Of a stretch of 43,193 nt of DNA, positions 3,465 through 43,193 are shown piece by piece. Source of the stretch: Dicyema japonicum (lineage: Eukaryota > Animalia > Dicyemida); the NCBI GenBank assembly GCA_011109175.1, contig RDEW01000127.1, positions 1 through 43,193 on the forward strand. The letters are read 5' to 3'. Every line of letters begins with the position of its first letter. Position 1 is the first letter of the stretch. The notes below the pieces were generated by a model. That model made no database searches and had not been told where the DNA came from. It worked only from the letters and a program-made list of their open reading frames with translations. The position numbers were made by a program, and so were the translations under genes.

Positions 3465-3529
3465 GGTTTCATGTAGCCATTCCTCCCAAAGAGACGCCCG
3501 GTGCCTAGTCGGCAGCAAACACAAAGAAC
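3465..3529 (+). ncRNA. Degenerate copy of the Ingi/Vingi-like 5' structured RNA element
   Basis: GACGCCCGGTGCCTAGTCGGCA (3493-3514) matches the 9628-9689 copy at 18/22 nt and keeps the UGCC/GGCA hairpin with a 5-nt loop; upstream GGTTTCATGT resembles GGCGTCATGT of the 36566 copy. Confidence 0.35.
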
Positions 3530-3969
3530 AGATTGAACTTTGAAAGGATGTTCTTATTTACAAAGTCTTCCAAGAATATATCGATGAACAAATATTCTGT
3601 GGAGTGAATGACATAAAGGCTAAACTAACGTCACAATAATAGATAGGGCAATTTTTGTATTAGTCAAAAATTCACATGTTATTTTAAATTGTTTAAAACT
3701 TATAAAAATAAAAATTTTATTGATTTTTATTATTTAATTTTTATAGTTTTCAAATAAATTACTAACGTGTCATCAACTTACGCTTCGTTCAATCAAGAAG
3801 GTTATTGAAAAGGTTAAAACTCATTAGAAAATATCCTGGAAAATTTTATATCAACAACTTTTTATTGAATTTTTCGTCTAATAAACATTTCAAACTAGCA
3901 TGTTTATTATTTTTATTAGAATTTTATGGTGCCACTGTAAAAATATATGATTTTCAAATTACATCTACC

Positions 3970-5960
3970 GACTCTAGGATCAATAAGTCACGAGTATCTT
4001 GTTAAAATCTTGGAAAACTCGGGACTACCAGAATGGATAACCAAATTTGTAATATCAATAATTCCAAACTGGCGTGTGTCATTAAGATTGGGGAAAAAGA
4101 TATTGGGAACGATTAATATAGAACGTGGTATACTCCAAGGCGATTCTCTGTCGCCTCAATTATTTGTACTTGTCTTGGATCCACTAAGCAGAATGTTGTC
4201 TGCAAAATATCCGAACATGTCTATCAATATTGCTGAATCTATTTCTTTTACTTTTTCTACGAATCATTTTTTTTTCATCAATGATGTGAAGTTGTTGGCA
4301 AAAGAGGAAGAGACACTGGATGATCAAAGCAGTGGATGCTTATTTAATTTGGTCGGTTTAGAAAAGAATTTCGATAAATCAGCAACAAATAGTTATTTAT
4401 TGTCGAATAATGCTAAATTAATGGATGGAGTAGATAGTTATCGCTATTTGGGGGTGTTAGAAGACAATTCCAGAAAAATAATTAAAGAAGTTGTACTTAA
4501 AAATATCAAAGAGGAGGTGCAAGATCGTATCGAAAAGCTGTCAAAAACGAAATTGAATTCGGTCAATTTGTGTAAAGCCATTAATGAACATGCTCTACCC
4601 CTTTTTGATTATTATATTGGTCTTCTCGAAATGGAACCCGGTGAATTCGAGGAAATGGATAGATTAGTCAGAAAATTACTTATGCATTTGGGTATTCACA
4701 TGAAACTGGCTTCCAAGGAAAGATTATACTTACCAAGGAGTACGCTGGGAAGAGGGCTGATATCAGTTACTTTTAAGTCAGAAAAAATGCTACTTGAGTT
4801 TAAAACAAGCCTTGAAAGGCGGAAATGATTTCTCTGAGAAAAGCTGGAATTCTGTGGGCCGAACAGCTAAGAAAAACACATATGGCCACAATCACAGAAT
4901 TCCTGCGGGTAAAATACCAAATGGGCCCAACCATAGACATTGTGGAGAATCTAAAGAGTTCACAGATTAACTCTCTCCTGTCTATCATCAAAAAGAAAAG
5001 CCTAAATTCAATATTATTTGAATCACTTGAGAAATTTGACATAAATCATCGTCTACATGGATCACAAATGGAAATATTTTTCCCAAGTCTGAAGCGATGT
5101 TCTTTCTTTTGCAAGATAGGAATATCTTTTTTCGGGATCTTGGTCTAAAATGTCCACATTGTAATTCCTCGAAAAAAACTGTCGATCATTTGGCTACGAG
5201 GTGTAACAGATGCTAAACTCAGACTATACAAGACGACACAATGAAATAGTTAAATGCATTCACATGCATTTATCTAGAAAATTTGGATTTAAAAAATCCA
5301 AAAAATTGAAGTCACATTCTATTCAAAGCATCATCACAAATCAGCATGCCGAGATCCGAGTTGATACGACCATTCCAACGGAGTCCAAAGTCCAATATAA
5401 CAAGCCTGACATTTTCTTGTACGATAAGAAAATGAACCAAATATGGCTAATTGAAATTGGAGTAACAGCAATGGACAATCTCAAGGCTGTCGAAGTTGAA
5501 AAACTACATAAATACGACATTCTGCGAGTGAACTAGAGATCATTTACAAAGCCAAAGTAAAGATACTCCCAATTGTTCTTACCTGGAATGGAATTGTCTC
5601 CAGGTATTTCAAATCATACATGGACATCATTGGAATTACGACCATCACCCGAGCGTACATCCAAACGATTGCGCTGAAGAAGACTTTAGAGAGCATGCTT
5701 GTAGAATATAAACACGGGTTTGAACAAATAACGATGGCGATTAACAATAATTGGGAAGTGATGAAGAATCCTCTTACTGGATGCAATTTGGGAAAGAGGC
5801 GACGCGACACTGATAAAGAGTTGGATGATACAAAAATAGGAAGGGAAGCGGAGATACTACCAAGAGAGTCCCGGTGGGTGCTGGCCTGGTCGGAGAGACC
5901 AGAAGTTGATACATTAATTAGATGATATGACTATTGTTTGTTTTGTTTTAACGATTGTCT
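3970..5960 (+). mobile_element. 5'-truncated, frameshifted R4/Dong-like non-LTR retrotransposon (RT + CCHC + restriction-like endonuclease)
   Basis: RT motifs GILQGDSLSPQLF, decayed catalytic FINDVK and YRYLG; CPHC..HLATRC knuckle; RRHNEIVKCIH; KPDIFLYD..IEIG PD-(D/E)xK motif; split over ORFs 3947-4828, 4825-5148, 5210-5536, 5620-5925. Confidence 0.88.
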
Positions 5961-6199
5961 TGATTACAATGGCTGCTAAAAAAAACCTCAAAAGAGGCAC
6001 AAAAAAAAGTTATTCATTGGTATCCCTACGCACGGAAATCTTTAGTAAAAGGCGAAAGATTTATACGTTATGTGTAGAAAACAGAACAAAATTTAGATAA
6101 CAGATAACATGATTTATTCGCAAAACCCCAACTAACTAAACAAGGTAAGAGCCATTAACTAAAGAGGAAAGCCAAGATTTGGGGTCGTCTATATCGGGG

Positions 6200-9453: not shown

Positions 9454-9785
9454 TTATTTATTTATTAACCCCGGATACACCGAGAAAAAAGTTAAAATAA
9501 ACAACTAATCGAGTGTACCCAGTATCCACTTCTACAGAAACAGAGTCCATCCGGAATCAGCATAAAGGGTAAGACGTCCATTACATGCAGTTGTGGAAAT
9601 CCCTCCATTGGGTTGGGGAAGAGCAAATGATCTATTTTCATGCCGGCCTGGCACTGGGCGTCACCTAGACAGGTGGATCAGATGACGCCACTCTATTAGG
9701 AAGAGAGAGGAGAAAGACAAGCAAGCAGAAAAATTAAACCAATTAACCACGCAGCACCACATGGCGCCACGAGGCAACTTTTTTT
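9454..9785 (-). mobile_element. 332-bp SINE-like non-autonomous element of the Ingi/Vingi-like family, with 15-bp TSD
   Basis: Exact direct repeat ttacctgagacaaaa at 9439-9453 and 9786-9800; carries the 5' structured motif followed by catttgctcttcccc as in the LINE at 38099; its 3' end resembles the LINE 3' ends (29617-29675, 40865-40938) and ends in a (TAAA)n tail. Confidence 0.8.
9628..9689 (-). ncRNA. HDV-like double-pseudoknot RNA element, copy A
   Basis: GGCGUCA UC UGAUC C ACC UGUCUA GG UGACGCC CA GUGCC AGGCC GGCAU GAAAAUA GAUCA; helix order P1-P2-P3-P3'-P1'-P4-P4'-P2'. Confidence 0.55.
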
Positions 9786-9852: not shown

Positions 9853-10445
9853 AAATCAAAAAAGCAGAAAATTGAAAGGAAATTCGATTCAGTTATTATT
9901 GACGAGTCAAAATGTCGAAATCAGAGTTGACACGTCGATTTTGCACACACAGGGTCATTATGCAACCATTGTAAAAAATGCAAGAAAACTGTTGATCATT
10001 TGGCCACTCAGTGTGGTAAAATGCTAAACAGTGATTATCTCCGAAGACATAATAAAGTGGTAAAGTGCATCGATCTTCACTTGTGTCGAGTGTATGGAAT
10101 CAAAAGAAGCAGGAAATTGAAAGGACATTCGGTTCAGTCAATATTGACGACTCAAAATGTCGAAATCAGAGTTGACACGTCAATTATGACAGAAACAAAA
10201 GTCCAATTCAATAAACCTGATATTTTTGTGTACGACAAAATAAAGAAGGAAGTAACCTTAATTGAAGTGGGCATTACTTCACAAGACCGACTACAGCAAG
10301 TTGAATTTGAGAGACCTCACAATTATGACTTGCTTGAAAACGAACTTTCGCTGCTCTACGAATGACAAGTGAAGATTATTCCAGTGGTTTTGACATGGGA
10401 TGGAGTTGTCTCAAGATGTTTCAAGAATCATATGGATAAATTTCA
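9853..10445 (+). mobile_element. Internal fragment of an R4/Dong-like RLE retrotransposon with a misplaced duplicated segment at its 5' junction
   Basis: HLATQCGKMLNSDYLRRHNKVVKCI..KPDIFVYD..IEVGIT..IIPVVLTWDG; 9853-9942 is a diverged copy of about 10099-10184. Confidence 0.85.
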
Positions 10446-16619: not shown

Positions 16620-18640
16620 AACGAATAAATTAAACTAATTAATTAATTAAGCGTATTTTGATCCAGATTGTTGGTAATCTCTCTTCTTCTCTTAGAAGAA
16701 GAGTGTGCCATAACCTCCCTGTTACTCCGCATCTCCACATCAGATTCAGTCAAAATATCTCCGTTTGAGTCCAATGGGCTGTCTCCACGGCATGCCAGTT
16801 CCACAAGTTGGGAGGTAGCAGAGGCGTACTCTTCATCGTATACCATTACCATAACAAATAGTTGAGGGGATAATGAATCTCCTTGCAAAATTCCCCGTCC
16901 CAGTTTTACAGAACCAATTCTTCTTCCATCTAAGTGGAGATTTACAGTCCACTTCTTGACTATGGTCTTTACAAAGTTTACAATCCAACGGGGTATTCCT
17001 GAGGAGTCCAATACATGAAATAAAAATTCATGGTCAACAGAATCAAAGGCCTTCTTCACATCCACCCAAGCAGAATAAAGGGCGTTTCCATACTCCTTAT
17101 TTAAGCATTGATTAATAAGGGCCTGCTCCTTAGCGCCCTGACAATGTTTCCTCGTTCCCAGCTGATTGTCAGATAATAGCCCAAACGAATCCACAAAATC
17201 TGAGAGTTTGGAATTAACACATTTGGTGATAAGTTTATATAAAGTTGGCATACACGTGATAGGACGTAAGTCATTAGGAGTCTCACAATCATCCTTTTTA
17301 GGAATTAAATAGGTTATTCCAGTATAAAACCAACTTTCAGGCATATATTCCCCATTAATAATTCGGTTAATCTCAGTACATAAAAAGCCATGTAAAGATT
17401 CCATTTTCTTAATAAAGAAGTTATATGAGCCATCGCATCCACACGCCTTCCAATCAGGGAGCCATTTAATAACATCCAGGATAAACTCATTTGTGAACTC
17501 TGGCAACATGCCTTCAATACCAGTATTTACTTTACCCACACTGTCATATGGCACGTTCATCTCTTTTCTTTTAGACCACACTTTTTCCCAAAACGACATA
17601 CAATCCTCATCATCGAAGCCATATAACGTTACTTCATTGCTTGCTGATAGGTTCCGATAAAATCTTCTTCGATTTAATTCAAAACAACAGTTGTCCTTGC
17701 GAAAGTCCTTCCTCGAATGATGTACAGCTATTTGCTTTTTCTTAATTCTGACAAGGTCACATAGTAGAGCCTCAATCCTGGCAACCTCCCCCTTTTTGGC
17801 CCTTTTGTATCCATAGGCACAAAGAACATCCATAACCTTTTGTTTTTCATACACAGGGAGAGCTTGTCTGGAAAAGCTATTGACAAGTTCTAGTTCTGCC
17901 ATCAGCTTTGAGATTTTCTTTTCAGTGTTCTCCAACCACGTACTTTGCGGTTTAACCTTCGCAGTTAAAGTCATATAAGCACACTGTGCAGCATATAGAA
18001 TATCAGTAATTTGATTGATATCTTGAGGCGGATTATCTTTCGTAATATAATATATTGCAGAATTTAGTCCCGACAAAACATTAACTCTGACATACTTTCT
18101 CTGAATTTTGGGTGTTGGTTTTCGAGTATCCCTCGGAATTGACTTAATTTTCTCAATTTGTACTTTTAGTTCCTCAAGGCAATTTCTGAAGGTGGAAATT
18201 TCCACATTAGTATTATTTTGCACTTTGAAACATTCGTCTCCTTTTACATTGTTATTCCGATTTTCAGGTTTCAGCATCTTTTTTAGTTGACATAGACTGG
18301 AACTCTTGGAGTACTTTTCATTGAACTTTTTGAGTACGAGGTTCCAGCCACCTCTAGGTATCCTTCCAAATCTTTGTTTCGTGGCAAGAAAAATCTGAGA
18401 TACCCACTCAGCTTCAGAGACACAGTGGACCTCTTCAATAATGGCAGATAATGAATGCAAGTTGGTATTGGCACCAATATTCCCAGCGATGTTGATATTA
18501 GTTCTTGTGACATTATCCAGCCCCACAGACGACGGTCCTGCTTCTACTAAACTATCTTCTTTATTTGATTTTGCAGGAATGCCCATAGGATTCGATTTCT
18601 CGGTATGATTAGAAACGGACATGTCAACACCACAACAACT
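16620..18640 (-). mobile_element. R4/Dong-like element with intact 5' ORF, internally deleted from mid-RT to the 3' tail (659-aa open fusion ORF 16643-18622)
   Basis: Long N-terminus, FELNRRRFYR, KACGCDG, LIPK, RPITC, QLG, DVKKAFDSVDH, QGDSLSPQLF; then an abrupt switch near 16842 to sequence homologous to 27814-27900. No YxDD and no RLE. Confidence 0.85.
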
Positions 18641-22416: not shown

Positions 22417-22610
22417 CAGAGACAATTCAAGACTCGGAAATAGATACGATGATTCTGTTTACGTTTCATCGATTTTGGTAAATTTATTCATTGATGTACG
22501 GGAAATGGCCATTCAGAGACAATTCAAGACTCGGAAATAGATACGATGATTCTGTTTACGTTTCATCGATTTTGGTAAATTTATTCATTGATGTACGGGA
22601 AATGGCCATT
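22417..22610. repeat. Exact 97-bp tandem duplication
   Basis: cagagacaattc starts at 22417 and 22514. Confidence 0.95.
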
Positions 22611-23641: not shown

Positions 23642-23935
23642 TAACCACGTAATTATAATTAGGTACTGGCAGAACTTAAATGCGTACTAAACTACAAAAA
23701 TCCGTTGGGTTATGTTTTGAATTATACCTTCACTTTCAAGAAAAGAAAGAAGATGCTCAACAAGATCACAATTCATTTAAATTTATATAACCACGTAATT
23801 ATAATTAGGTACTGGCAGAACTTAAATGCGTACTAAACTACAAAAATCCGTTGGGTTATGTTTTGAATTATACCTTCACTTTCAAGAAAAGAAAGAAGAT
23901 GCTCAACAAGATCACAATTCATTTAAATTTATATA
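23642..23935. repeat. Exact 146-bp tandem duplication
   Basis: taaccacgtaattat starts at 23642 and 23788. Confidence 0.95.
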
Positions 23936-33473: not shown

Positions 33474-33705
33474 ATGGATACAGACGATCTGGCGTAATCA
33501 GGAGACCAGACGACAACGAAAGGGACGGAGAAGGCTAACGGAATGGATAGTAAAAAAAGTGGCACAAGCGAAGCCATAAACAGTGTTTAATGGATGCAGA
33601 CGATCTGGCGTAATCAGGAGACCAGACGACAACGAAAGGGACGGAGAAGGCTAACGGAATGGATAGTAAAAAAAGTAGCACAAGCGAAGCCATAAACAGT
33701 GTTTA
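33474..33705. repeat. 116-bp tandem duplication (about 2 mismatches)
   Basis: Copies start at 33474 and 33590. Confidence 0.93.
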
Positions 33706-34076: not shown

Positions 34077-34416
34077 CCCAATCTAACTGTTCAATGCCTA
34101 ATAGATGTTCTTGTCCAGAGATAGATTCGGCTTCTTTACAAGTAACTATTAGTAAACAAGTAAATTTTAATTTGGAATCCCCCCAAAGTAAATTTGAAAA
34201 GATGGGGTATCTGATTAAATGCTGCAGCATATTTCTTAAGGAATCTCCCAATCTAACTGTTCAATGCCTAATAGGTGTTCTTGTCCAGAGATAGATTCGG
34301 CTTCTATACAAGTAACTATTAGTAAACAAGTAAATTTTAATTTGGAATCCCCCCAAAGTAAATTTGAAAAGATGGGGTATCTGATTAAATGCTGCAGCAT
34401 ATTTCTTAAGGAATCT
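34077..34416. repeat. 170-bp tandem duplication (few mismatches)
   Basis: cccaatctaactg starts at 34077 and 34247. Confidence 0.93.
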
Positions 34417-34960: not shown

Positions 34961-35348
34961 TATTAGGGTTACCGATATTCCAATTTTTTGTTTTAAACGG
35001 ATTTGGTAGACTGTTGCCAGGTTTGTCTTGAAATTGGATTATTGGGAAAGATTCATATCTCCATCCTTTCTATAAATTAATATAAAGTTTATACGTAAAA
35101 CCAAGAAACACCGACAAATTAGCCAGAATACACGTCGGTCAGATGATCCCGATNTATTAGGGTTACCGATATTCCAATTTTTTGTTTTAAACGGATTTGG
35201 TAGACTGTTGCCAGGTTTGCCTTGAAATTGGATTATTGGGAAAGATTCATATCTCTATCTTTCCTATAGATTAATATAAAGTTTATACGTAAAACCAAGA
35301 AACACCGACAAATTAGCCAGAATACACGGCGGTCAGACGATCCCGATT
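34961..35348. repeat. 194-bp tandem duplication with a single N at the junction
   Basis: tattagggttaccgat starts at 34961 and 35155; N at 35154. Confidence 0.93.
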
Positions 35349-35867
35349 TGTGTGTTTCATTTGAGCTAAATACCGCAGCTTGACAACTGCTGGACTAAAT
35401 TCAGTTGGATTCCGTGTCGAATCTCGTTCCTACCCTTTCTGATCGAAGGTTTCATGCCTCTACAATGCTGTTTGGCAATATAAACGAGGCCACCATTATT
35501 GATATCACTCTTATAAAATGTAATAGATGAATTTTTTCAGAGGAGAGAGAAAATTATTTTTATGCCCGAAAAAACAAGACGATCCGTTATAAATTTGCAT
35601 CTATATGAGGTCTGACGCGAGTTTTATTAAGACAGGAGAAATAATTGAGACCATTGAATTAAACTGAGGAATAAAAAATATCAGAATTCTGTACCAAAAA
35701 CACCTTCGTATGCCAAGTTTATCGAAGATTAAACGGAAAATTATAAGTTCACGCCTATCGAGACGGGCCATATGGTATTTCAGCTACCCCTTACATCTAA
35801 CCTTACTCAATTTATTTTATAATTAAAATTAAAAAATAAAATTATTTCCAAAAACCAAGGGTAACCA

Positions 35868-35990
35868 TACTGGTTGGAGAACACTGAGAAGAAAATCTTA
35901 AAGCTGACGGCAGTATTAGAACTTGTCAATCGTTTTACCAGACAGGCTTTTTTTTGAAAAACAAAAGGTTATGGATGTTCTTTGTGCATA
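35868..35990 (+). mobile_element. N-terminal fragment of the R4/Dong-like family
   Basis: WLENTEKKILKL..LELVN..RQA..EKQKVMDVLCAY matches the 659-aa ORF at 16643-18622. Confidence 0.8.
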
Positions 35991-36111
35991 TTGATATATT
36001 ATATTACTCTAATGTACACATATTCAATAAGTTTGAGAATATATTCAACCTTTCAACAACATCATTGTGGGGACTCACTGCAAATGGAAGTGTGCTTTTT
36101 ATCCCTTTATT

Positions 36112-36369
36112 ATTAAATTATTCCAAAGACCAAGGGTAACCAAACTAACCAACTCCTTGATCCTGACTCGTTCCAGCATTCCAGAACTTGTCACCAGGTA
36201 ACGACATTGTCCCCGGGGAATAATTGTTGGATCTACTTTATGCCGTCCAGGCATTGGGCGCTCCTCAGTAAGGTGATCCAGTGACGCCATCGGAAGGAAG
36301 GAAAATACAACTATCCACGTAGCACCAATGACAAACTATCCACGTAGCATTGCATGGCGCCTCGCGCAG
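36112..36369 (-). mobile_element. About 258-bp SINE-like element with structured 5' motif (copy B at 36229-36288)
   Basis: Same architecture as 9454-9785: GGCGCCATG..GTGCTACGTGG, a pyrimidine-rich spacer, then the fold. Candidate degraded TSD tttatccctttatt (36098-36111) / tttatccattcatt (36370-36383), 12/14. Confidence 0.6.
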
Positions 36370-36560
36370 TTTATCCATTCATTCAGTTTTTTAATTATAA
36401 TAAAAATTTATCCATTCATTCAGTTTTTTATTATAATTTATATAAATAAAAATAAAAATTATTTAAATAAATAATTAAAAATCAATTCATATATAAATAA
36501 ATAAATAAATAATAAAAATATATAAATAAATAAATATATAAATAAATAAATAAGAATTTT

Positions 36561-36677
36561 CTCGTGGCGTCATGTGGTTCACCTTTTGTGGTGGCGCTCA
36601 GTGTAATAATACACAAAAAAGAACCATTTGCTCTTCCCCATCCAGACTCTTTATGCCTGGATGGTATACCTCAACTG
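36561..36677 (+). mobile_element. 5' end of the Ingi/Vingi-like element with complete fold (copy C at 36566-36625), cut at a single N
   Basis: 36621-36677 is nearly identical to 38133-38189; the fold is GGCGUCA UGU GGUUC ACC UUUUGU GG UGGCGCU CA GUGU AAUAAU ACAC AAAAAA GAACC. Confidence 0.78.
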
Positions 36678-37027
36678 GNATAAGCAATTAAAATAATTAG
36701 TGATGAGATAATATGGTTAGAAGAATATTTGGTTGTTAGTCTCTAATATTTTACTATGAGAAGTTTGAATCCAGTCAGACACACAACTTAGAGAAACCTG
36801 ACGATAGGTTTATGATGGTTAATTATTATGTTTTTTTTCAGTGTATAAGTTAAATAGCACCTAGCTTCCACATTGCCATCAAGGATATCTTTTTTAAAAT
36901 TAGGAATCTATTCGATATGTTTGGTTTATTAATATATATTGGGAAATTGACTTTTTATTGTGATTCGTAATAATTTACTAAATTTCGTTTGTGAATTTTG
37001 CATTCTATTGCAATTAAGCAAATTTGT

Positions 37028-37203
37028 CAAGTTCACTGCATTTTTCTAGGAGCAACGTTGTAAAATACAGATTTAAATATTAGAGTGCTCCTTTTTTGAC
37101 ACATTTTACTTTTCCCAAGTTCACTGCATTTTTCTAGGAGCAACGTTGTAAAATACAGATTTAAATATTAGAGTGCTCCTTTTTTGACACATTTTACTTT
37201 TCC
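37028..37203. repeat. Exact 88-bp tandem duplication
   Basis: caagttcactgc starts at 37028 and 37116. Confidence 0.95.
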
Positions 37204-37328
37204 ACCTATTTCAAACAATAAATATGGATACTCAAATAAGCACTCAGTAAGCTAAATTTATTATTTTCCTAGGACAAAGTCAAGTACTTATCAACACACA
37301 TAAAGACGATAAAAATTAAATTTCCCTC

Positions 37329-37965
37329 CTAAATATCAAATCTTGTGGACAAAATATAATCAATAATACAATCTGTCGGTTCAGTGGGAATATCCTCAAA
37401 AATTTGTTCATTAAAGGCTAAAGAAAAAGTCCTCGGCCTAATTACGCCTTTCCATGAATTCAAATACCTATCATAATATCCTCGACCTCTCCCCATTCGC
37501 TTACCGCATATAGTAAAGGCAACCCCGGGTACTACAAGGACATCCAAACCTTCTAGTATAAAGCTCACTCAAACCGGAGTCTTCAGCCTCGACTTTGTTT
37601 TCGACTTGTTCATGCTGAAAAAATTTCATTGAACTTTTTCTTAGTGAAGCAAAGTCACTCACTCCATCCAATCTGAGCATCCTCATGGGCCCAATTTCTG
37701 GGCAATAAGGAATGAAGCAGCTCTTGTTATCTCTGAAGGCTGAAGTGATGATTTTATTGGTTGAGACTTCGCTTGGGATGCTCACGTAGAAACCAATATT
37801 CTTGGAGTCCTTGTATAGTTGGGTTTGTAAGAACTAAATTGGATACAGATTTCGGCTTACTTTCTCTTGGACTATATCTGACTGACGTTGTCGTTCGCCC
37901 TTGCTTAGTTTTGCTATGATGTTTAGAGCTTCACGTCTGAAATCAGTTTTAGATAGAGACTGCAT
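37329..37965 (-). CDS. MTHFS: 5-formyltetrahydrofolate cyclo-ligase, 195 aa; exons 37965-37861, 37833-37575, 37552-37329
   Basis: Removing GT-AG introns of 27 nt (37834-37860) and 22 nt (37553-37574) gives an uninterrupted 588-nt CDS with IGFYVSIPSEV, KSCFIP, GLDVLVVPGVAF, RMGRGRGYYDRYL, LAFNEQI. Confidence 0.92.
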
Positions 37966-38221
37966 AACATAACCGCAAATAAACTTAAAATTTTATTTAT
38001 TTTTTAATATGGTTGGCTTAATTATATTAAAAAGAATTATTACTAATATTATAAAATAAGGCTAAGGAACTATTGACTTATTTAAATCAAAATGAAGTGT
38101 AGAATGCGCTCAGTGTAGAATGACATCAAAAAGAACCATTTGCTCTTCCCCACCCAGACTCCTTATGCCTGGATGGTATACCTCAACTGACAACTCGAGA
38201 TGTTGTTTGTTCCCCTGGATT

Positions 38222-38260
38222 CTATTGCTTTCTGGAGATATTGAACAAAACCCTGGACCA
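38222..38260 (+). other. 2A-like (StopGo) ribosomal skipping motif LLLSGDIEQNPGP
   Basis: Exact fit to D(V/I)ExNPG-P, in frame and immediately before the APE start FMQLNANG. Confidence 0.85.
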
Positions 38261-38264
38261 AAAC

Positions 38265-38446
38265 CTTTTGTTTTTATGCAACTCAATGCTAACGGTATAA
38301 AAACAAAGATTCTGGAGTCACGATGTCTATCATCAAAGCACAAGATTGACATTTCCCTTTGTTTTTATGCAACTCAATGCTAACGGTATAAAAACAAAGA
38401 TTCTGGAGTCACGATGTTTATTATCGAAGCACAAGATTGACATTTC
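38265..38446. repeat. 91-bp tandem duplication that frameshifts the APE ORF
   Basis: gtttttatgcaactc starts at 38270 and 38361; copies differ at a few sites. Confidence 0.93.
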
Positions 38447-41019
38447 CCTTATCCAGGAGTCAAAACTTTCTACAAAGAGTACAACCCCACTTTTTCCTAG
38501 ATATATCTCTATCAGAAAAGACCGTATCGGACGTGGTGGCGGCTTACTTACCACTATTAAAGACGGTTTATCTTTCTACGATGTGAGCTCGCAAGTGGAT
38601 GATTTAATTCTACACCACAGGACCGCGGAACAAATTTCTATTGATCCTATTAATGGATCAGAACATCTATTTCTAATCAACATTTACATACCACCGCCGG
38701 ATCTCTAATAACTATGTTCCGAAGCTTGACAAACTACAAGAAATTCGAATTGTGTTACTATGTGGGGATTTCAACACCAAACATCCGCAATGGCTCAATA
38801 TCCAGTCGGCAGACAAGAAGGGGAGTCTAATTATCGACTCTCGAAAAAATGGTGATTCTGAATCACCCGAACATCTTTACAAGGACACCAGTCCAAAGAA
38901 ATGACAACCCAACCTTTCCGACATATCCATTGCTTCCTTTAGGATTTCCCGAAGATTTCATGGAACGTCTCCTACGATTTTCATAGTGATCATAATCCGA
39001 TTATATTAAAACTGAGCCGATTCAATAACTCACATAGAATTAAAGCAACCTTCAAGGTCTACAAGAAAGCTGACTAGTCGAATTTCAAGCTCTTCGTTGA
39101 CCATAACCTAATACATTTTGATCCCACCTCATTTTGCTCCATCGACAAAGCAGTGGACCATCTAAACCATGTAATCCTTCAAGCTGAAAAATTGTTTGTA
39201 CCACGTGCAGTTTAAAAATCTTACAAGCCTACTCTGGACTCGGAGACTTGTCAAACAAAGAAACTCCCTGAAGATGAATAATCTGCAAACCTGATTTGGA
39301 AAATATAAAATGCTTATATCAGATAATTACAAAACTAATCAGAGAAAAGAAAGATGTGGCGTGGAACCGCCTATTATCATCTGTTGGACATATAAAATCC
39401 ACGAGTCTTTTATGGAAAACTATTCTTCAAATCAATTCAAACTTATCAGATGTATAGAATCTTTTTCTGCTCCAAATACTGTGCAAGCTAACAACCCAAT
39501 GAAATATTACGCATCCATGAGTCACATGGACCTCTCGAAATCCCATTCTTGTCACCTTCAGAATTTAATCAATTTTTAATTTGTATTCTAACAAGAACGT
39601 CATCCCATGCAAATGGAAGAACTCATTTATAATACCCCTCCTAAAACTAGGAAAACCGAAAACCTTACCTTCTTCCTACCGTCCAATTTCATTAACTGTT
39701 CATTATCGCGCCTAATGGAGAATCTCGTTCTCTGGAAAATTAATCCCTATTTGCCCGACTGTCACTTTCAACATGGTTTCAGATATGAGCGTTCAACTAC
39801 GACACATTTGACTTTACTGTCTCAATTTATATCAGAAGGGTTCAACGAACTGAAACGCCATTTACGGACAATAGTGGTCTCCCTGGACATTTAAAAGGCG
39901 TTCGATTCTGTCCAGAGAACATTACTCACGAAAAAGGTTTTTGACACTACCATTCAGCCGGCTTTGAAAAGATTTTCTCTCCGGAAGAAAAGACGTGTCT
40001 GTATAGGCCACGCAAGATCGAGGTCCCGTCTCCTACCAAATGGCGTCCCTCGAGGATCCCCCTCTCTCCGGCGTTATTAAATTTATTCCTAAACGATTTA
40101 CCCTGCCCTGGAGGACCAGATTCAATGCTTCTCACTTATGCTGACGACCTAGTCATCGCTAGCAAGAACAAATACGTGGGTATAGCAAAATCAGAGCTTC
40201 AGTCACATATTGACGACCTGGGAGCCTGGTTGAATTTGAATCGTCTCTCCATATCCAGGGATAAATCAACGTATACAATTTTCACCACAGACGAAAAAGA
40301 AATTCATACACTGGATTTGAACATTTATAGACTCTTTAACATTACAAATTCATCCAACTATTCTGGGAGTGACTTTCGACCCTTTGATGACAATTTCTCA
40401 ACATGTGAAGAACGTCATGACAAAGGGTCTCAAGAAACTAAGTATAATCAAACCGCTCTCAAGTCCAGGCCGTCACGGGAATGCGCTGTCTTCTTGTTCA
40501 ATCAACTTCTAAAACCGACGGTAGAGTATGCTTGTGCCTCATGGGCCTATGGAGCTTCAATATCTAATTCATACAAGATCAACTCCCTAGCAGGCAAACT
40601 TTCACGTCTAACAAATTTACCCCCGATCTTTTTCCCCCAATGGTTGACTACGCCGCAATCAAAAATAACGGCTCCAGCTTCATCTGTCTGTATGGTCAAA
40701 AAACAAATCGTTTCTTCCATTCAAGGCTAGAGGCCTCAAATACACGAAACTTGGGGAAAAAAAACCCACCCCTCTTCAAACTCTAATGAAATCTGATCGT
40801 CATCTATTCAGGAAAGCCGTACTCTGAAGGAACATAGGAAAAACCTCTCGATCCTGTTGAGGCGTACCGGGATCACTTTATTAGTTGGTTTACTCCTTTT
40901 TTCTTAGTGTTCCCTTTTCGGGGTTATTAAATAAATAAAAATCAAAACGAAGTACTATGTGAATATTATTCATAAAGCATTTTCAAAACACCTGGATGTT
41001 CATTCTGGCAATGGTTGAA

Positions 41020-42080
41020 GGAATAAATGTCCCGACATTACTATCTTCAACCCTTCAATGGTGCAATCAGTAATTAGGAAAATGAATAACTCGTCTCCCC
41101 GCGGTTCAGATGACATCTCTATTCTCGAACTGAATCACCTGGGTCTTTCCGCGACAGCCGCAATGACATAAATTTTCAACTTCTCAATTAACGAGAACAA
41201 GATTCCGTCAATATAAGAGAAATCTCTGATACACCCTGTCCTGAAGAAAAACAAACCATCAAACTGCCTGTCCTCCTACCGACCGGTATCCATCATCTGC
41301 GCCTTATCACGAGTGTTAGAAAAACTGGTCCTTCTCAAGATGCGTCCTTTCATAACTCTACCATCTTTTCAACATGGATTCCGCGAAGGACACTCAACAA
41401 CAACTCATCTAACAAAACTGGTTAAATTAATCTTGGACGGCCTGAATACCCCAAATCCACACGAGAATCGTGCTGGTCTCAGTGGATGTGGAGAAGGCTT
41501 TTGACTCAATATCCTTGAAGATCCTTACAGCAAAAATTTTTACGACGTCGATCTACCCTAAGTTCAAATCATGTTTGGCTAACTTCATCAACGGTCAAAT
41601 GGGCCAAGTAGTGGCAAACAACCAAAAATCAAAACAGCGATACTTTCCAAATGGAGTTCCACAAGGATTCTTCTATCGTATACGGATGATCTAGTGGTCG
41701 CAGTGAAACATTGAAGAATCGAGGAGGCGACACGATCCATGCAAGACCTACTAAACCAGAAGTGTTTTTGGTTCCTGAAGAACCGTCCGAATATATCAAC
41801 AGAAAATTCACATGTAATGACGTTCACCTCAGCACGAAAATAATTACGGGCAGCACCACGAGTAACATTATATGACTCCCCGCTTCCCATTAAAAAAACC
41901 TTTTAAATCCTTGGAGTCATCCTGGATCCTCTACTCACATTTACCTATCAAGTGGACCTAGTAACCGCGAGAATCCAAAAGAAAATTGGAATCCTCAAAT
42001 CGTTCACTCACTCTCCAGTATCTTTAGAGCTTATATACAAACAATTTGTTCTACCTAGAATCGAGTAAGCCTGTGCTGCA
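41020..42080 (+). mobile_element. Second decayed Ingi/Vingi-like RT segment with deletion after the QG box
   Basis: SYRPVSI, FQHGFREGHSTTTHL, VDVEKAFDSI, GVPQG joined almost directly to YTDDLV, LGVILDP, YKQFVLPRIE*AC. Confidence 0.85.
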
Positions 42081-42384
42081 GTTCAAAAAATATTTTTTCA
42101 CTGAAAAAGTATTAAAAATATTGTCTTTAATTCTAGACCCTCTGTTATTAACAATATTTTGTGGGTTAAATTTTGGTCAAAGATTTCTGTTCCTTATCAT
42201 CCCTTGTATCAGTAGAATAGCATAATGTGATAAACATGCAAGGGCTGCTAGAAAAAGGAGCATTTGGTATTCTCTATTCAACAAGGATTCCCATGAGTAC
42301 AAAGTAAAGATAGAATCTTTCCTTTCGCTGGTGCAAATTGGGATTGTGAGATATTAGAAGATCATCGCGTCTGTGACAGTAGGA

Positions 42385-42435
42385 ACTGAATACAATTAAT
42401 TATTAACTTCTTTCTCGGTGATCCGAGGGTTTTAA
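42385..42435 (+). repeat. Detached 3'-end motif of the Ingi/Vingi-like family
   Basis: ttaacttctttctcggtgatccgagggtt resembles ttaacttttttctcggtgtatccggggtt (SINE 3' end) and the 29640-29675 end. Confidence 0.45.
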
Positions 42436-43193
42436 TTCGACTCATCAACTTTGATTTCTAATTTTATATTTTAGCAGTTTAATTTTGTTCAAACTCATAA
42501 AGATGGAAAATGAGATAACACTGAATTAGAATTACGTCACATGATCGCATCAAACAAATTGAGGTTAGATGTGTCACTATTATTACCTTCTCTTAAGAAA
42601 ATTATCTTTATTACAATTCACAAATGATGATTATTGTCCTGGAACATTCCGAAGTTGTCCCAAACATACATGATTAAGTAAAAATAACTTACATCAAATC
42701 AGACATATTGAATAAATCTATAAGGAGTTTGTCCCTAAACACAAACATGGAATCAAAATTACTGATGAAAGTCACCAATGTGTACTTGTGCAACTGACGT
42801 GTGGTAGCATGAAACACATCCTAGATTGGAAAAGGATTCGGAAAGAAACGAGACGACTCACTTGAATATAGAGAAATGGGAATAGGATGAGTGGGCTTAT
42901 AGTTTTTGAAAGTCTCTGTCCTTGTAACAAAGGTAAAGAAAGTGACCAAAGCGTTTATTATCGAATCCAATCAGATAACTATTAGAGAATATTATTAAGG
43001 AAATCAAAAGATAATGTAAACAGAATTTCACGAAAATGTAAATAATAAAACCACCATAACTAATTCTATAAAAAACTATAACTTACGATCTCTGAATGAT
43101 TCTGTTGCATGTATTATTGAAATGTACTCAAAAATAGAAAAATTATAATTTTTAAGAAAATAATAAAAACATAAAACAAATTGGTGACTTACA

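What the first reader, a model, noticed from the sequence alone, without database searches (positions are those of the whole stretch)
36566..36625. Conserved 5' RNA fold with HDV-ribozyme topology, compensatory changes and a non-canonical core
Seen: three complete copies (9628-9689 minus, 36229-36288 minus, 36566-36625 plus) and one partial copy (38106-38137 plus) share helix order P1-P2-P3-P3'-P1'-P4-P4'-P2'. Pairing is kept while sequence changes: P2 UGAUC/GAUCA, GGAUC/GAUCC, GGUUC/GAACC; P4 GUGCC/GGCAU, AUGCC/GGCAU, GUGU/ACAC; P1 GGCGUCA pairs with UGACGCC or UGGCGCU (G.U at the first pair, as in HDV). Established: trypanosomatid ingi/L1Tc elements carry an HDV-like ribozyme in their 5' Pr77 signature. 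Unusual here: J1/4 is CA, not GG (each L3 contains a UG that could pair with it), and J4/2 is A-rich, with a candidate catalytic C only in the two plus-strand copies (36614, 38127). Inference: either a variant HDV-like ribozyme or a catalytically dead scaffold kept for another job (promoter, translation initiation, RT recognition).
Basis: partly seen in the sequence, partly recalled or inferred. Interest (0 to 1): 0.85.

Follow-up and report, generated by a model that had tools for sequence, protein, structure and literature searches.

The report
HDV-type ribozyme fold heading octopus LINEs
The roughly 60-base motif is a real, covarying RNA double pseudoknot of the hepatitis-delta ribozyme type, shared by a family of octopus jumping genes (LINEs) and their short parasites (SINEs); it is a known kind of device in a new host and element group, and whether it still cuts itself is untested.

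Summary
Copies A (9689-9628 minus), B (36288-36229 minus), C (36566-36625 plus) and partial D (38106-38137 plus) share the helix order P1-P2-P3-P3'-P1'-P4-P4'-P2'. With seven more copies from Octopus sinensis loci, 90% of pair cells are paired (36-50% when partners are slid), and 12 of 18 pairs change on both sides.

The module belongs to 2A-leader APE/RT LINEs and their SINE-like derivatives. The ORF start codon (MWFTF...) lies inside the fold.

The "missing catalytic C" is mostly decay of the window copies. In a same-species DNA run, 99% of word depth reads C at 36615, the base after P4 (it aligns with D's C38127). For copy B, 83% reads C at the same place.

Against efficient cutting, all nine full copies examined have sequence 5' of the predicted cut: a leader in the six LINE copies, and an internal fold position in the three SINE-like copies. 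L3 and J1/4 are non-canonical in most subfamilies. No RNA evidence could be obtained.

This scan noted the same fold many times on other DNA of this genome. Verdict: new member of a known kind, moderate interest.

The parts
36566..36625 (+). Copy C, the complete fold at the head of a LINE fragment. P1 36566-36571 with 36593-36598; P2 36575-36580 with 36621-36626; P3 36581-36583 with 36590-36592; L3 36584-36589; J1/4 36599-36600; P4 36601-36604 with 36611-36614; J4/2 36615-36620.
   Evidence: Sequence; model match 81 bits, E 7e-17; only strict-descriptor hit in the window; pair counts.
36557..36565 (+). Nine-base leader UUUUCUCGU upstream of the predicted cut. It resembles the head of copy A (CCUCGU) and the leader of L066:3157 (CUCGUG).
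36572..36574 (+). AUG inside P1/J1/2 that opens the leader ORF (MWFTFCGGAQ...). The same MWFTF start, in frame to the 2A site, is present in two O. sinensis LINE subfamilies.
   Evidence: Read from the sequence; P0003 sequence; L001 DNA; L066 DNA read in frame to GDVEQNPGP.
36615..36615 (+). First base of J4/2. It is A in this copy, but C in 190,368 of 191,498 word depth (45 contigs) of the same-species DNA run. It is homologous to C38127 of copy D and is the candidate catalytic cytosine position.
   Evidence: table 3; alignment.
38106..38137 (+). Copy D, the 3' half of the fold (P1', J1/4, P4, J4/2 CAAAAA, P2') at the head of a 5'-truncated, decayed LINE.
   Evidence: (family D12); contigs joining 36591 to 38106 (table 5).
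38120..38260 (+). Leader ORF of copy D running from inside P4 to the 2A site (GDIEQNPGP, 38234-38260). The endonuclease part follows and is broken by a 91-base tandem duplication.
   Evidence: homologue P0003.
38106..42436 (+). Decayed LINE body of copy D: endonuclease homology (by alignment to P0003), a reverse-transcriptase fragment, and a 3' end CTCGGTGATCCGAGGGTT shared with SINE-like copy A.
   Evidence: (RVT_1, 26.5 bits, just under Pfam's 29.6-bit cutoff).
36229..36288 (-). Copy B, the fold inside a SINE-like element. P1 has only 5 bp. In 69% of family word depth one extra base (A or G on the RNA strand) is read between 36261 and 36260, in P1'. The base after P4 (36239) is A here and C in 83% of family depth.
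   Evidence: (tables 3 and 4).
36289..36375 (-). Head of the SINE-like element upstream of copy B. It includes GGCGCCAUG, a second P1-like motif. About half of the family depth continues into it.
   Evidence: (depth bins; loose end at 36307).
9628..9689 (-). Copy A, a complete fold with no C in J4/2 (GAAAAUA), lying about 97 bases inside a SINE-like element.
9454..9785 (-). SINE-like (bipartite non-autonomous) element holding copy A. It consists of a head, the LINE 5' module, the LINE 3' end and a (TAAA)n tail. It is flanked by 15-bp target-site duplications TTTTGTCTCAGGTAA at 9800-9786 and 9453-9439.
   Evidence: 3' end compared.

Best explanation
The motif is the 5' HDV-like (delta-type) ribozyme module of a high-copy family of compact 2A-leader APE/RT LINEs of an octopus, and of the short SINE-like elements derived from them. 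The LINEs look Ingi/Vingi-like, but the clade was not tested.

Shown:
- The RNA folds as a nested double pseudoknot (P1, P2, P3, P4) kept by compensatory changes across at least five subfamilies.
- The family majority has a C directly after P4, followed by an A-run.
- The start codon of the leader-2A-endonuclease-RT ORF lies inside the fold.
- The four window copies are decayed relics. C has A for the majority C at 36615. B has a shortened P1' and A for C at 36239. A has no C in J4/2. D is 5'-truncated.

Inferred mechanism:
- In master copies the fold forms co-transcriptionally.
- The J4/2 cytosine acts as general acid to cut 5' of the first P1 base (36566 in copy C).
- This frees the LINE RNA from its short leader or from read-through transcripts.
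- It leaves a compact 5' knot that protects the end and places the AUG at bases 7-9, as proposed for R2, RTE and L1Tc ribozymes.

Cutting is probably partial or conditional. Genomic copies inherit the leader, so uncut RNA is the usual template for new copies. The same knot then probably also serves as the 5' cis-element that lets the LINE machinery mobilise the short derivatives.
For: - Pair counts: 90% paired against 36-50% slid, 12 of 18 pairs changed on both sides against 1-6, 0 of 500 shuffles. Five-sequence version.
- P2 was outside the model structure and still covaries. P2 covaries in non-coding SINE-like copies: UGAUC/GAUCA, UGGAUC/GAUCCA, UGGUCC/GGACCA and GGGUCC/GGACUC. Protein coding therefore cannot explain it.
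- P1 changes AUCGUC/GACGAU and GGCGUU/AACGCC.
- P4 differs completely between subfamilies: GUGU/ACAC, AUAC/GUAU, UGCUGAU/AUCAGCA and GUGCC/GGCAU.
- C after P4: 99% of depth at 36615 and 83% at 36239; D; four L001-family copies; L068:16915; L002. In L066:3157 it lies one base later. The codon holding this C differs (CCA, UCA, CUA), so the amino acid is not what is kept.
- L066:3157 has L3 UUCUCGU, J1/4 with GG, and J4/2 ACAAACA. L002 has L3 UGUUCGC, with J1/4 AC pairing GU at L3 positions 2-3, and J4/2 CAAA. From my memory of the HDV and CPEB3 sequences, both L3 loops are close to canonical.
- The strict descriptor hits only copy C in the window (0 in 5 shuffles) and the head of the L002 ORF.
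- Context: HDV-like ribozymes at the 5' ends of L1Tc/ingi, R2 and RTE (PMC3185411, PMC4035085; listed in PMC5786205); the cleavage site is the first P1 base and the core is L3 plus J4/2 (PMC4908430).
Against: - No cleavage or 5'-end data. The RNA runs found were of other species, were held only as contigs, and did not cover the fold.
- All nine full copies examined have sequence upstream of the predicted cut. Four L001-family copies at different loci share (G)UUUUUAGCGC and diverge only beyond it. One of them has a likely TSD. C has UUUUCUCGU. L066:3157 has a 17-nt leader. A is TSD-bounded with the fold about 97 nt inside. B and L065:15896 have the fold well inside their elements, and L068:16915, of the same family as L065:15896, also has shared sequence upstream.
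- In most octopus subfamilies L3 (UUUUGU, UUUUCU, UGUCUA) lacks the canonical C-G-C/U end. J1/4 is CA.
- The L001 family has a C-C mismatch at the first P1 pair.
- One SINE-like family replaces L3 by a hairpin of about 28 nt but keeps P1 and P2. This argues for a structural rather than catalytic constraint there.
- No Rfam HDV-type family matches even at E<=10. The same is true of the canonical-looking L002 and L066 folds, so this is weak evidence.
Confidence: 0.55

Rival explanations
1. The fold is a non-cleaving structural descendant of an HDV-like ribozyme. The double pseudoknot would be kept as the 5' cis-element recognised by the LINE protein, or as an end-protecting or translation-positioning structure around the AUG, and cutting would no longer occur. 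Such a cis-role would explain why short non-autonomous derivatives keep the LINE's 5' module as well as its 3' end.
For: - Every full copy examined has sequence upstream of the predicted cut.
- The fold lies inside the three SINE-like elements, where cutting would remove the head.
- One SINE-like family keeps P1 and P2 while L3 is replaced by a hairpin.
- L3 and J1/4 are non-canonical in most subfamilies.
- In L002 the only AUG before the 2A site spans the predicted cut.
- Literature: only RTE, Ingi, Vingi and R2 give bipartite non-autonomous LINEs (PMC5786205). Vingi- and RTE-based trans templates are built with both the cognate 5' and 3' UTRs, and the R2 ribozyme fold is described as protecting the 5' end (PMC13708176).
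Against: The C immediately after P4 is kept in the majority of two families and in several subfamilies, while neighbouring bases and the encoded amino acid vary. From general knowledge of the HDV ribozyme, that base is needed for catalysis rather than for folding. L066:3157 and L002 have near-canonical cores.
Confidence: 0.35
2. There is no RNA structure. The similarity would reflect DNA-level motifs: palindromic GGCGCC and GATC sites, for example promoter or transcription-factor sites repeated in the element head. Alternatively it would reflect conservation of the leader peptide, with the pairings arising by chance.
For: - GGCGCC, TGATCA and GGATCC are palindromes, so any two copies can 'pair'.
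- A third GGCGCCATG motif sits in the heads of A and B.
- The module is coding in the LINEs (MWFTF..KRTICS).
- A loose HDV descriptor matches about 100 places by chance.
Against: - Non-palindromic compensatory pairs exist: GGUUC/GAACC, GGUCC/GGACC, AUCGUC/GACGAU and GGCGUU/AACGCC. P4 stems share no sequence.
- Slid-partner controls fall to 36-50% pairing.
- Covariation is seen in non-coding SINE-like copies.
- The P4 region differs in length and in amino acids between LINE subfamilies while staying a hairpin.
Confidence: 0.05
3. It is a different class of self-cleaving RNA linked to retrotransposons (twister variant or hammerhead) that only resembles the HDV fold.
For: Twister variants head Perere-3 LINEs in Schistosoma (PMC8501958). 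The window has a similarly AT-rich, repeat-rich animal genome.
Against: The twister core strings GUCCCAAGC-CCGG-GUAAA listed in PMC8501958 are absent from the copies. No CUGAUGA...GAAA hammerhead core is present. No Rfam ribozyme family matches at E<=10.
Confidence: 0.02

Closest known systems
L1TcRz / Pr77 HDV-like ribozymes of trypanosomatid L1Tc/ingi LINEs and their NARTc, RIME and SIDER derivatives (PMC3185411, PMC4035085, PMC3383444)
   Same: - An HDV-type double pseudoknot in the first approximately 77-90 nt of an APE-type LINE that also has an N-terminal 2A peptide.
- The same module is carried by short non-autonomous derivatives, sometimes internally (SIDER2 signature II).
- Many copies are degenerate or inactive.
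   Different: - No detectable sequence similarity was tested or found here.
- The host is a cephalopod.
- In L1Tc the cut is at +1 of the element, while the octopus copies carry an inherited leader of about 9-17 nt.
- The ORF start codon lies inside the octopus fold.
- Activity is shown for L1TcRz and untested here.
HDV-like ribozymes of R2, RTE, Baggins and other LINEs (Ruminski et al. 2011, cited in PMC5786205 and PMC4908430; R2 in PMC3774820)
   Same: A ribozyme fold at the LINE 5' end. Proposed roles are 5' processing, translation initiation without a cap, and 5' end protection. P4 is variable.
   Different: R2 is processed out of an rRNA co-transcript, and its copies begin at or upstream of the cut in a way set by the target. 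Here the elements are dispersed, and their own leader is inherited.
Vingi-clade LINEs and the SINEs that carry Vingi 5' ends in their bodies (SINE2-1_ACar and SINE2-1_AMi with Vingi-2; PMC5786205)
   Same: Compact single-ORF APE/RT LINE with no RNase H domain detected. Short derivatives consist of head + LINE 5' end + LINE 3' end, as with copy A and the L065/L068 elements.
   Different: Vingi is not among the clades that paper lists as having a 5' ribozyme (R1, R2, R4, RTE, Ingi, LOA). Clade membership of the octopus LINE was not tested here.
Genomic HDV and CPEB3 ribozymes
   Same: - The helix order is the same.
- P1 has 6-7 bp, with G.U at the first pair in copy C.
- P3 has 3 bp.
- A C directly follows P4 and is followed by As.
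- L066:3157 (UUCUCGU) and L002 (UGUUCGC) have L3 loops close to the HDV/CPEB3 loops as I recall them.
   Different: Most octopus subfamilies have a 6-nt U-rich L3 and J1/4 = CA, so P1.1 would be U-A/G-C instead of C-G/C-G. No Rfam model match.

Membership tests
HDV-like self-cleaving ribozymes | Nested double pseudoknot: P1 crossed by P2, with P3 nested inside P1 and P4 between P1' and P2' (PMC4908430) | tested here: met
   90-93% of pair cells paired, with compensatory changes in all four helices. P2 was tested independently of the model.
HDV-like self-cleaving ribozymes | Catalytic cytosine at the start of J4/2, directly after P4 | tested here: inconclusive
   Absent in window copies A and B and at 36615 in C; present in D (38127). 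The family majority is C at 36615 (99%) and at 36239 (83%). It is present right after P4 in the L001 family, L068:16915 and L002, and one base later in L066:3157. Its catalytic role was not tested.
HDV-like self-cleaving ribozymes | P1.1: one or two pairs between L3 and J1/4 | tested here: inconclusive
   It is possible in every copy: UG with CA in A, B and C; UC with GG in L001 and L066; GU with AC in L002. Between C and L001 the same L3 position flips G-C to C-G. The register varies, and a chance match in a 6-7-nt loop is likely.
HDV-like self-cleaving ribozymes | Canonical L3 of about 7 nt (the HDV UCCUCGC and CPEB3 UUCACGU type, as I recall them) | tested here: inconclusive
   Met in L066:3157 (UUCUCGU) and L002 (UGUUCGC). 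Not met in window copies A, B and C or in the L001 family (UGUCUA, UUACUGA, UUUUGU, UUUUCU). Replaced by a hairpin in L065:15896 and L068:16915.
HDV-like self-cleaving ribozymes | Self-scission 5' of the first P1 nucleotide | not testable with these tools
   No usable RNA reads. Indirect evidence is negative: all nine full copies examined have sequence upstream of that site.
HDV-like self-cleaving ribozymes | Match to a curated Rfam HDV-type covariance model | tested here: not met
   No hit at E<=10. The models also miss the canonical-looking L002 and L066 folds, so the test has little power.
Ingi/Vingi-type LINE with 5' ribozyme and 2A | Single ORF with N-terminal 2A, APE endonuclease and RT; Vingi lacks RNase H (PMC13708176) | tested here: inconclusive
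   2A, APE and RVT_1 were found. No RNase H hit in the ORF pieces after RT, but those copies are decayed. No phylogeny against reference Ingi or Vingi sequences was possible.
Bipartite non-autonomous LINE / SINE with a LINE 5' module in its body | Short element with the partner LINE's 5' part and 3' end, flanked by target-site duplications | tested here: met
   Copy A has 15-bp TSDs, the fold plus about 110 nt of LINE 5' sequence, and a LINE 3' end and (TAAA)n tail matching 42405-42436. The L065 and L068 elements share about 110 nt with the L001-family LINE 3' end.

The most novel reading that the evidence does not exclude
The HDV-type double pseudoknot is above all the 5' cis-recognition and end-protection module that these LINE proteins need to complete a copy, with self-cleavage secondary or lost. 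Vingi-like elements would then join R2, RTE and Ingi, so that every LINE clade known to spawn bipartite non-autonomous elements carries such a knot. This would explain why SINE bodies keep LINE 5' ends and why Vingi and RTE gene-writer templates are built with the 5' UTR. A corollary: thousands of SINE copies inside octopus transcripts could carry a conditional self-cleaving site.
Probability: 0.25. Interest if true: 0.7.

Novelty: new member of a known kind. Interest (0 to 1): 0.42.

Why it matters
HDV-like ribozymes heading LINEs are established for R1, R2, R4, RTE, Ingi/L1Tc and LOA (PMC5786205). A cephalopod 2A-LINE, probably Vingi-like, and its SINEs would add a host phylum and an element group. 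No paper in the held library links HDV-like ribozymes with octopus or cephalopod LINEs, and Vingi is not among the clades listed as having a ribozyme.

Three features are worth a specialist's attention:
- The ORF start codon lies inside the fold, and the 2A peptide then sheds the leader peptide that the structured RNA encodes.
- A short leader upstream of the expected cut is inherited.
- The module is kept inside abundant SINE-like elements, with its J4/2 cytosine in the family majority.

Together these make the question "what does the 5' end of a LINE do for trans-mobilisation?" testable in a natural system. That question bears on Vingi- and RTE-based gene-insertion tools, whose templates are built with both UTRs (PMC13708176).

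For the window itself, the result is mostly that four decayed repeat copies belong to a known kind of device.

Tried and rejected
- Rfam at gathering and at E<=10 on all copies and on L002 and L066 gave no HDV-type hit. I judged this uninformative.
- Twister and hammerhead readings were rejected because the core strings are absent.
- The idea that the SINE head is tRNA-derived (CCTCGTGGCGC resembles a tRNA 5' end from memory) found no tRNA model match at E<=10. The head is better read as a partial duplicate of the LINE's first ~25 nt.
- Protein searches for more copies yielded little:
  - the full-library search with the 87-aa leader ORF gave one true relative;
  - two word-index searches gave P0003, P0006 and P0007;
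  - cluster members gave three more O. sinensis copies.
- The metagenome scan gave six marine 2A-LINE loci (L003-L006, L009, L010). No fold was found in them by the model or the strict descriptor. Their 5' ends may not be on the contigs.
- RNA runs were of other species and held only as contigs. They did not cover the fold, so there is no 5'-end evidence.
- An attempt to place the family's 5' boundary from binned depth (36505-36575 against 36576-36646) is too coarse to use.
- No TSD was found for L001 within its first locus.
- MFE folding without pseudoknots gives P1+P3+P4 for A (z -2.4) but alternative folds for B and C. It cannot test the knot.

Full report
**What is at the coordinates**

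The window is an AT-rich (about 35% GC), repeat-rich animal sequence with a U5 snRNA gene.
- Copy C (36566-36625, plus) lies after a (TAAA)n stretch and a 9-base leader. It is cut short at an N at 36679.
- Copy D (38106-38137, plus) is the 3' half of the same module at the head of a decayed, 5'-truncated LINE.
- D's ORF runs from inside P4 through a 2A site (GDIEQNPGP, 38234-38260) into an endonuclease part and a reverse-transcriptase fragment.
- Copies A (9689-9628, minus) and B (36288-36229, minus) lie in short SINE-like elements.

**Host and element**

A full-library protein search with D's leader ORF found one true relative, P0003, a RefSeq protein of Octopus sinensis. It begins MWFTFSGGAGYSPKRYLKRTICS.

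Copy C read from its AUG at 36572 gives MWFTFCGGAQCNNTQKRTICS. The start codon of the leader-2A-endonuclease ORF therefore lies inside the fold, at bases 7-9.

P0003's locus L001 and three paralogous loci carry the same fold. A third LINE subfamily with the same MWFTF start, in frame to GDVEQNPGP, is at L066:3157-3083 minus. A 2A-LINE from an unidentified organism in an ENA metagenome (P0006, locus L002) has a well-formed fold exactly at the start of its ORF.

**Is the fold more than chance?**

Topology alone is not significant. A permissive descriptor finds about 100 start positions in the window. A strict one finds only copy C on both strands of the window, none in five shuffles, and the L002 site. 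That descriptor requires a GC-rich 6-bp P1, a 3-bp Watson-Crick P3, L3 of 5-8 nt, a C directly after P4 and a P2 of at least 5 bp.

The real support is covariation.
- On the first five sequences, 93% of pair cells are paired (31-45% with slid partners). Five pairs change on both sides (0-1 when slid).
- A covariance model built on P1, P3 and P4 only found the four window copies and two weak decayed candidates. It also found seven copies in about 82 kb of O. sinensis DNA.
- On that alignment (11 distinct sequences), 90% of cells are paired against 36-50% slid. Twelve of 18 pairs change on both sides against 1-6. No shuffle of 500 reaches the observed values.
- P2, the helix that makes the pseudoknot, was not in the model structure. 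It still shows 89% pairing and four of six pairs changed on both sides.

Informative examples:
- P1 is GGCGUC/GACGCC, GGCGUC/GGCGCU, GGCGUU/AACGCC and AUCGUC/GACGAU.
- P2 is UGGAUC/GAUCCA, UGGUUC/GAACCA, UGGUCC/GGACCA and GGGUCC/GGACUC.
- P4 is GUGCC/GGCAU, GUGU/ACAC, AUAC/GUAU and UGCUGAU/AUCAGCA.

P2 covaries in the non-coding SINE-like copies, so protein coding does not explain it.

Caveats: GGCGCC and GATC are palindromes, and the A-versus-B difference in P2 is partly a register shift. The alignment is fitted to the model for P1, P3 and P4.

**The 'non-canonical core'**

Laying Logan contigs of a same-species DNA run on 36150-38270 at 80% likeness showed that these are high-copy families. 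Summed word depth is about 1e5 or more on the repeats, against a few hundred to about 1,500 on the sequence between them.
- At 36615 the letter read is C in 190,368 of 191,498 depth (45 contigs).
- 36615 is the first base after P4 and aligns with D's C38127. The family's J4/2 is therefore CAAAAA, not AAAAAA.
- For copy B, the plus-strand T at 36239 is read as G in 83% of depth. On the RNA strand that is C directly after P4.
- In 69% of depth an extra base is read in B's P1', giving GACGCC or GGCGCC.
- The four L001-family copies (GUAU-C-UAAAAA), L068:16915 and L002 (AGAAGUA-C-AAA) also have C right after P4. L066:3157 (ACAAACA) has it one base later.
- The codon holding this C differs between subfamilies (CCA, UCA, CUA), so the base rather than an amino acid is what is kept.

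The lack of a catalytic C in A, B and C is thus, at least for B and C, decay of the copies in this window. I could not lay reads on A.

What remains non-canonical:
- L3 is U-rich and 6 nt long in most octopus subfamilies.
- J1/4 is CA in the window copies.
- Relatives have GG with UC in L3 (L001, L066) or AC with GU (L002).
- Between C and L001 the same L3 position flips G-C to C-G. This fits a P1.1 pairing but is thin evidence.
- L066:3157 (L3 UUCUCGU) and L002 (L3 UGUUCGC) are close to the HDV/CPEB3 loops as I recall them.

**Evidence against simple 5' processing**

In R2 and L1Tc the cut defines the element's 5' end. Here it does not.
- Four L001-family copies at different loci are identical from (G)TTTTTAGCGC onward and unrelated before it. 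One has a likely 10-bp TSD bounding a 4.0-kb element. An 8-11-nt leader upstream of P1 is therefore inherited.
- Copy C has UUUUCUCGU. L066:3157 has a 17-nt leader that duplicates its own P2-P3-L3 segment and ends in CUCGUG. The head of A has CCUCGU before a second GGCGCCAUG motif.
- Copy A is bounded by 15-bp TSDs, with the fold about 97 nt inside.
- B, L065:15896 and L068:16915 also have shared sequence upstream (loose end at 36307).

None of the nine full copies examined starts at the first P1 base, so the RNAs that were copied had not been cut there.

One SINE-like family keeps P1 and P2 with compensatory changes, although L3 is replaced by a hairpin of about 28 nt. In L002 the only AUG before the 2A site spans the predicted cut.

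These points give real weight to a structural role: protein recognition, end protection, or positioning of the AUG.

**Comparison with what is known**

HDV-like ribozymes form a nested double pseudoknot. The cut is at the first P1 base, and the core is made of L3 and J4/2 (PMC4908430). They head R2, RTE and L1Tc/ingi elements, among others (PMC3185411, PMC4035085, PMC3774820; six clades are listed in PMC5786205). L1Tc and Ingi also carry an N-terminal 2A (PMC3708506).

Kojima (PMC5786205) showed several related points:
- Only RTE and Vingi 5' ends are found in SINE bodies.
- Only RTE, Ingi, Vingi and R2 give bipartite non-autonomous LINEs.
- A ribozyme inside a SINE would behead it.
- Vingi is not among the clades listed with a ribozyme.

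The window's elements fit the bipartite pattern. Copy A shares its 3' end and (TAAA)n tail with LINE D. The L065 and L068 elements share about 110 nt with the L001-family LINE 3' end.

A 2026 review reports that Vingi- and RTE-based gene-insertion templates carry both cognate UTRs. It also describes the R2 ribozyme fold as protecting the 5' end (PMC13708176).

No paper in the held library links HDV-like ribozymes with octopus or cephalopod LINEs.

Rfam's HDV-type models match none of the copies. They also miss the canonical-looking L002 and L066 folds, so that test has little power.

**Earlier notes of this scan**

The same fold has been noted many times on other pieces of this genome. My results agree that the fold is real, that it heads 2A LINEs, and that it lies inside SINEs with bases kept upstream. 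They differ from notes that describe a lost catalytic signature, because the family majority keeps the J4/2 cytosine.

**Verdict**

The most likely reading (0.55) is an HDV-like ribozyme module of an octopus 2A-LINE family and its SINE-like derivatives, seen here as four decayed copies. Cutting would be at most partial, because uncut RNA is what gets copied.

The main rival (0.35) is a non-cleaving descendant kept as a 5' structural or cis-acting element.

This is a new member of a known kind, of moderate interest.

Noticed in passing
window 5983-6089 (-): U5 spliceosomal snRNA gene (78.6 bits, E 7e-12), which shows the window is eukaryotic nuclear DNA.
   Followed up: no
window 38264-38445 (+): A 91-base tandem duplication (96% identical) right after the 2A site breaks the reading frame of LINE copy D at the start of its endonuclease part.
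   Followed up: partly
window 3465-3532 (+) and 12824-12783 (-): Two weak matches to the fold model (E 0.14 and 0.03). 3465 reads GGUUUCAUG...GACGCCCGGUGCCUAGUCGGCAGCAAAC and looks like a further decayed A-type copy.
   Followed up: partly
L066:3174-3158 (-) against L066:3148-3132 (-): The 17-nt leader upstream of P1 duplicates the element's own P2-P3-L3 segment almost exactly (GGUUCACCUUCUCGUG). Leaders of copy C and the head of copy A end in the same CUCGU. The origin and role of this duplication are unexplained; it could compete with P2.
   Followed up: partly
window 9755-9778 (-) and 36350-36372 (-): The heads of SINE-like elements A and B carry a second GGCGCCAUG motif that matches the first ~18 nt of LINE copy C. 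It faintly resembles a tRNA 5' end and contains CGCCAUGUG, which looks like a YY1-type site (from memory). No tRNA model match at E<=10.
   Followed up: partly
L002:1297-1372 (+): A 2A-LINE from an unidentified organism in an ENA metagenome has a near-canonical HDV-like fold. Its first base is the G of the ORF's only AUG before the 2A site, with a UAA stop directly before it. Cutting would destroy that start codon.
   Followed up: partly
window 5210-5536 (+) and 10000-10365 (+): Two related ORF fragments (RRHN..KPDIF.YD......IE.G) look like the C-terminal restriction-enzyme-like endonuclease part of another LINE group. They are flanked by 86-base repeats (family D5).
   Followed up: no
window 35865-36135 (-): The 3' end of SINE-like element B (GGTTACCCTTGGTYTTTGGAA) occurs twice, flanking a ~230-base insert that is also found inverted at 17808-17938. 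This is probably a nested insertion with a duplication.
   Followed up: no
window 36679: A single N (assembly gap) ends the homology of copy C with copy D. The body of that LINE copy is missing or unassembled.
   Followed up: no
window 22417-22610, 23642-23933, 33474-33705, 34077-34416, 34961-35347, 37023-37198: Several two-copy tandem duplications of 88-193 bases at 96-100% identity are scattered through the window.
   Followed up: no
L003-L006, L009, L010 (marine metagenome contigs): Six further 2A-LINEs share a conserved GTGTTTTTGG.[AT]GCG motif shortly before the 2A site. They have long 5' regions with no fold found by the model or the strict descriptor.
   Followed up: partly
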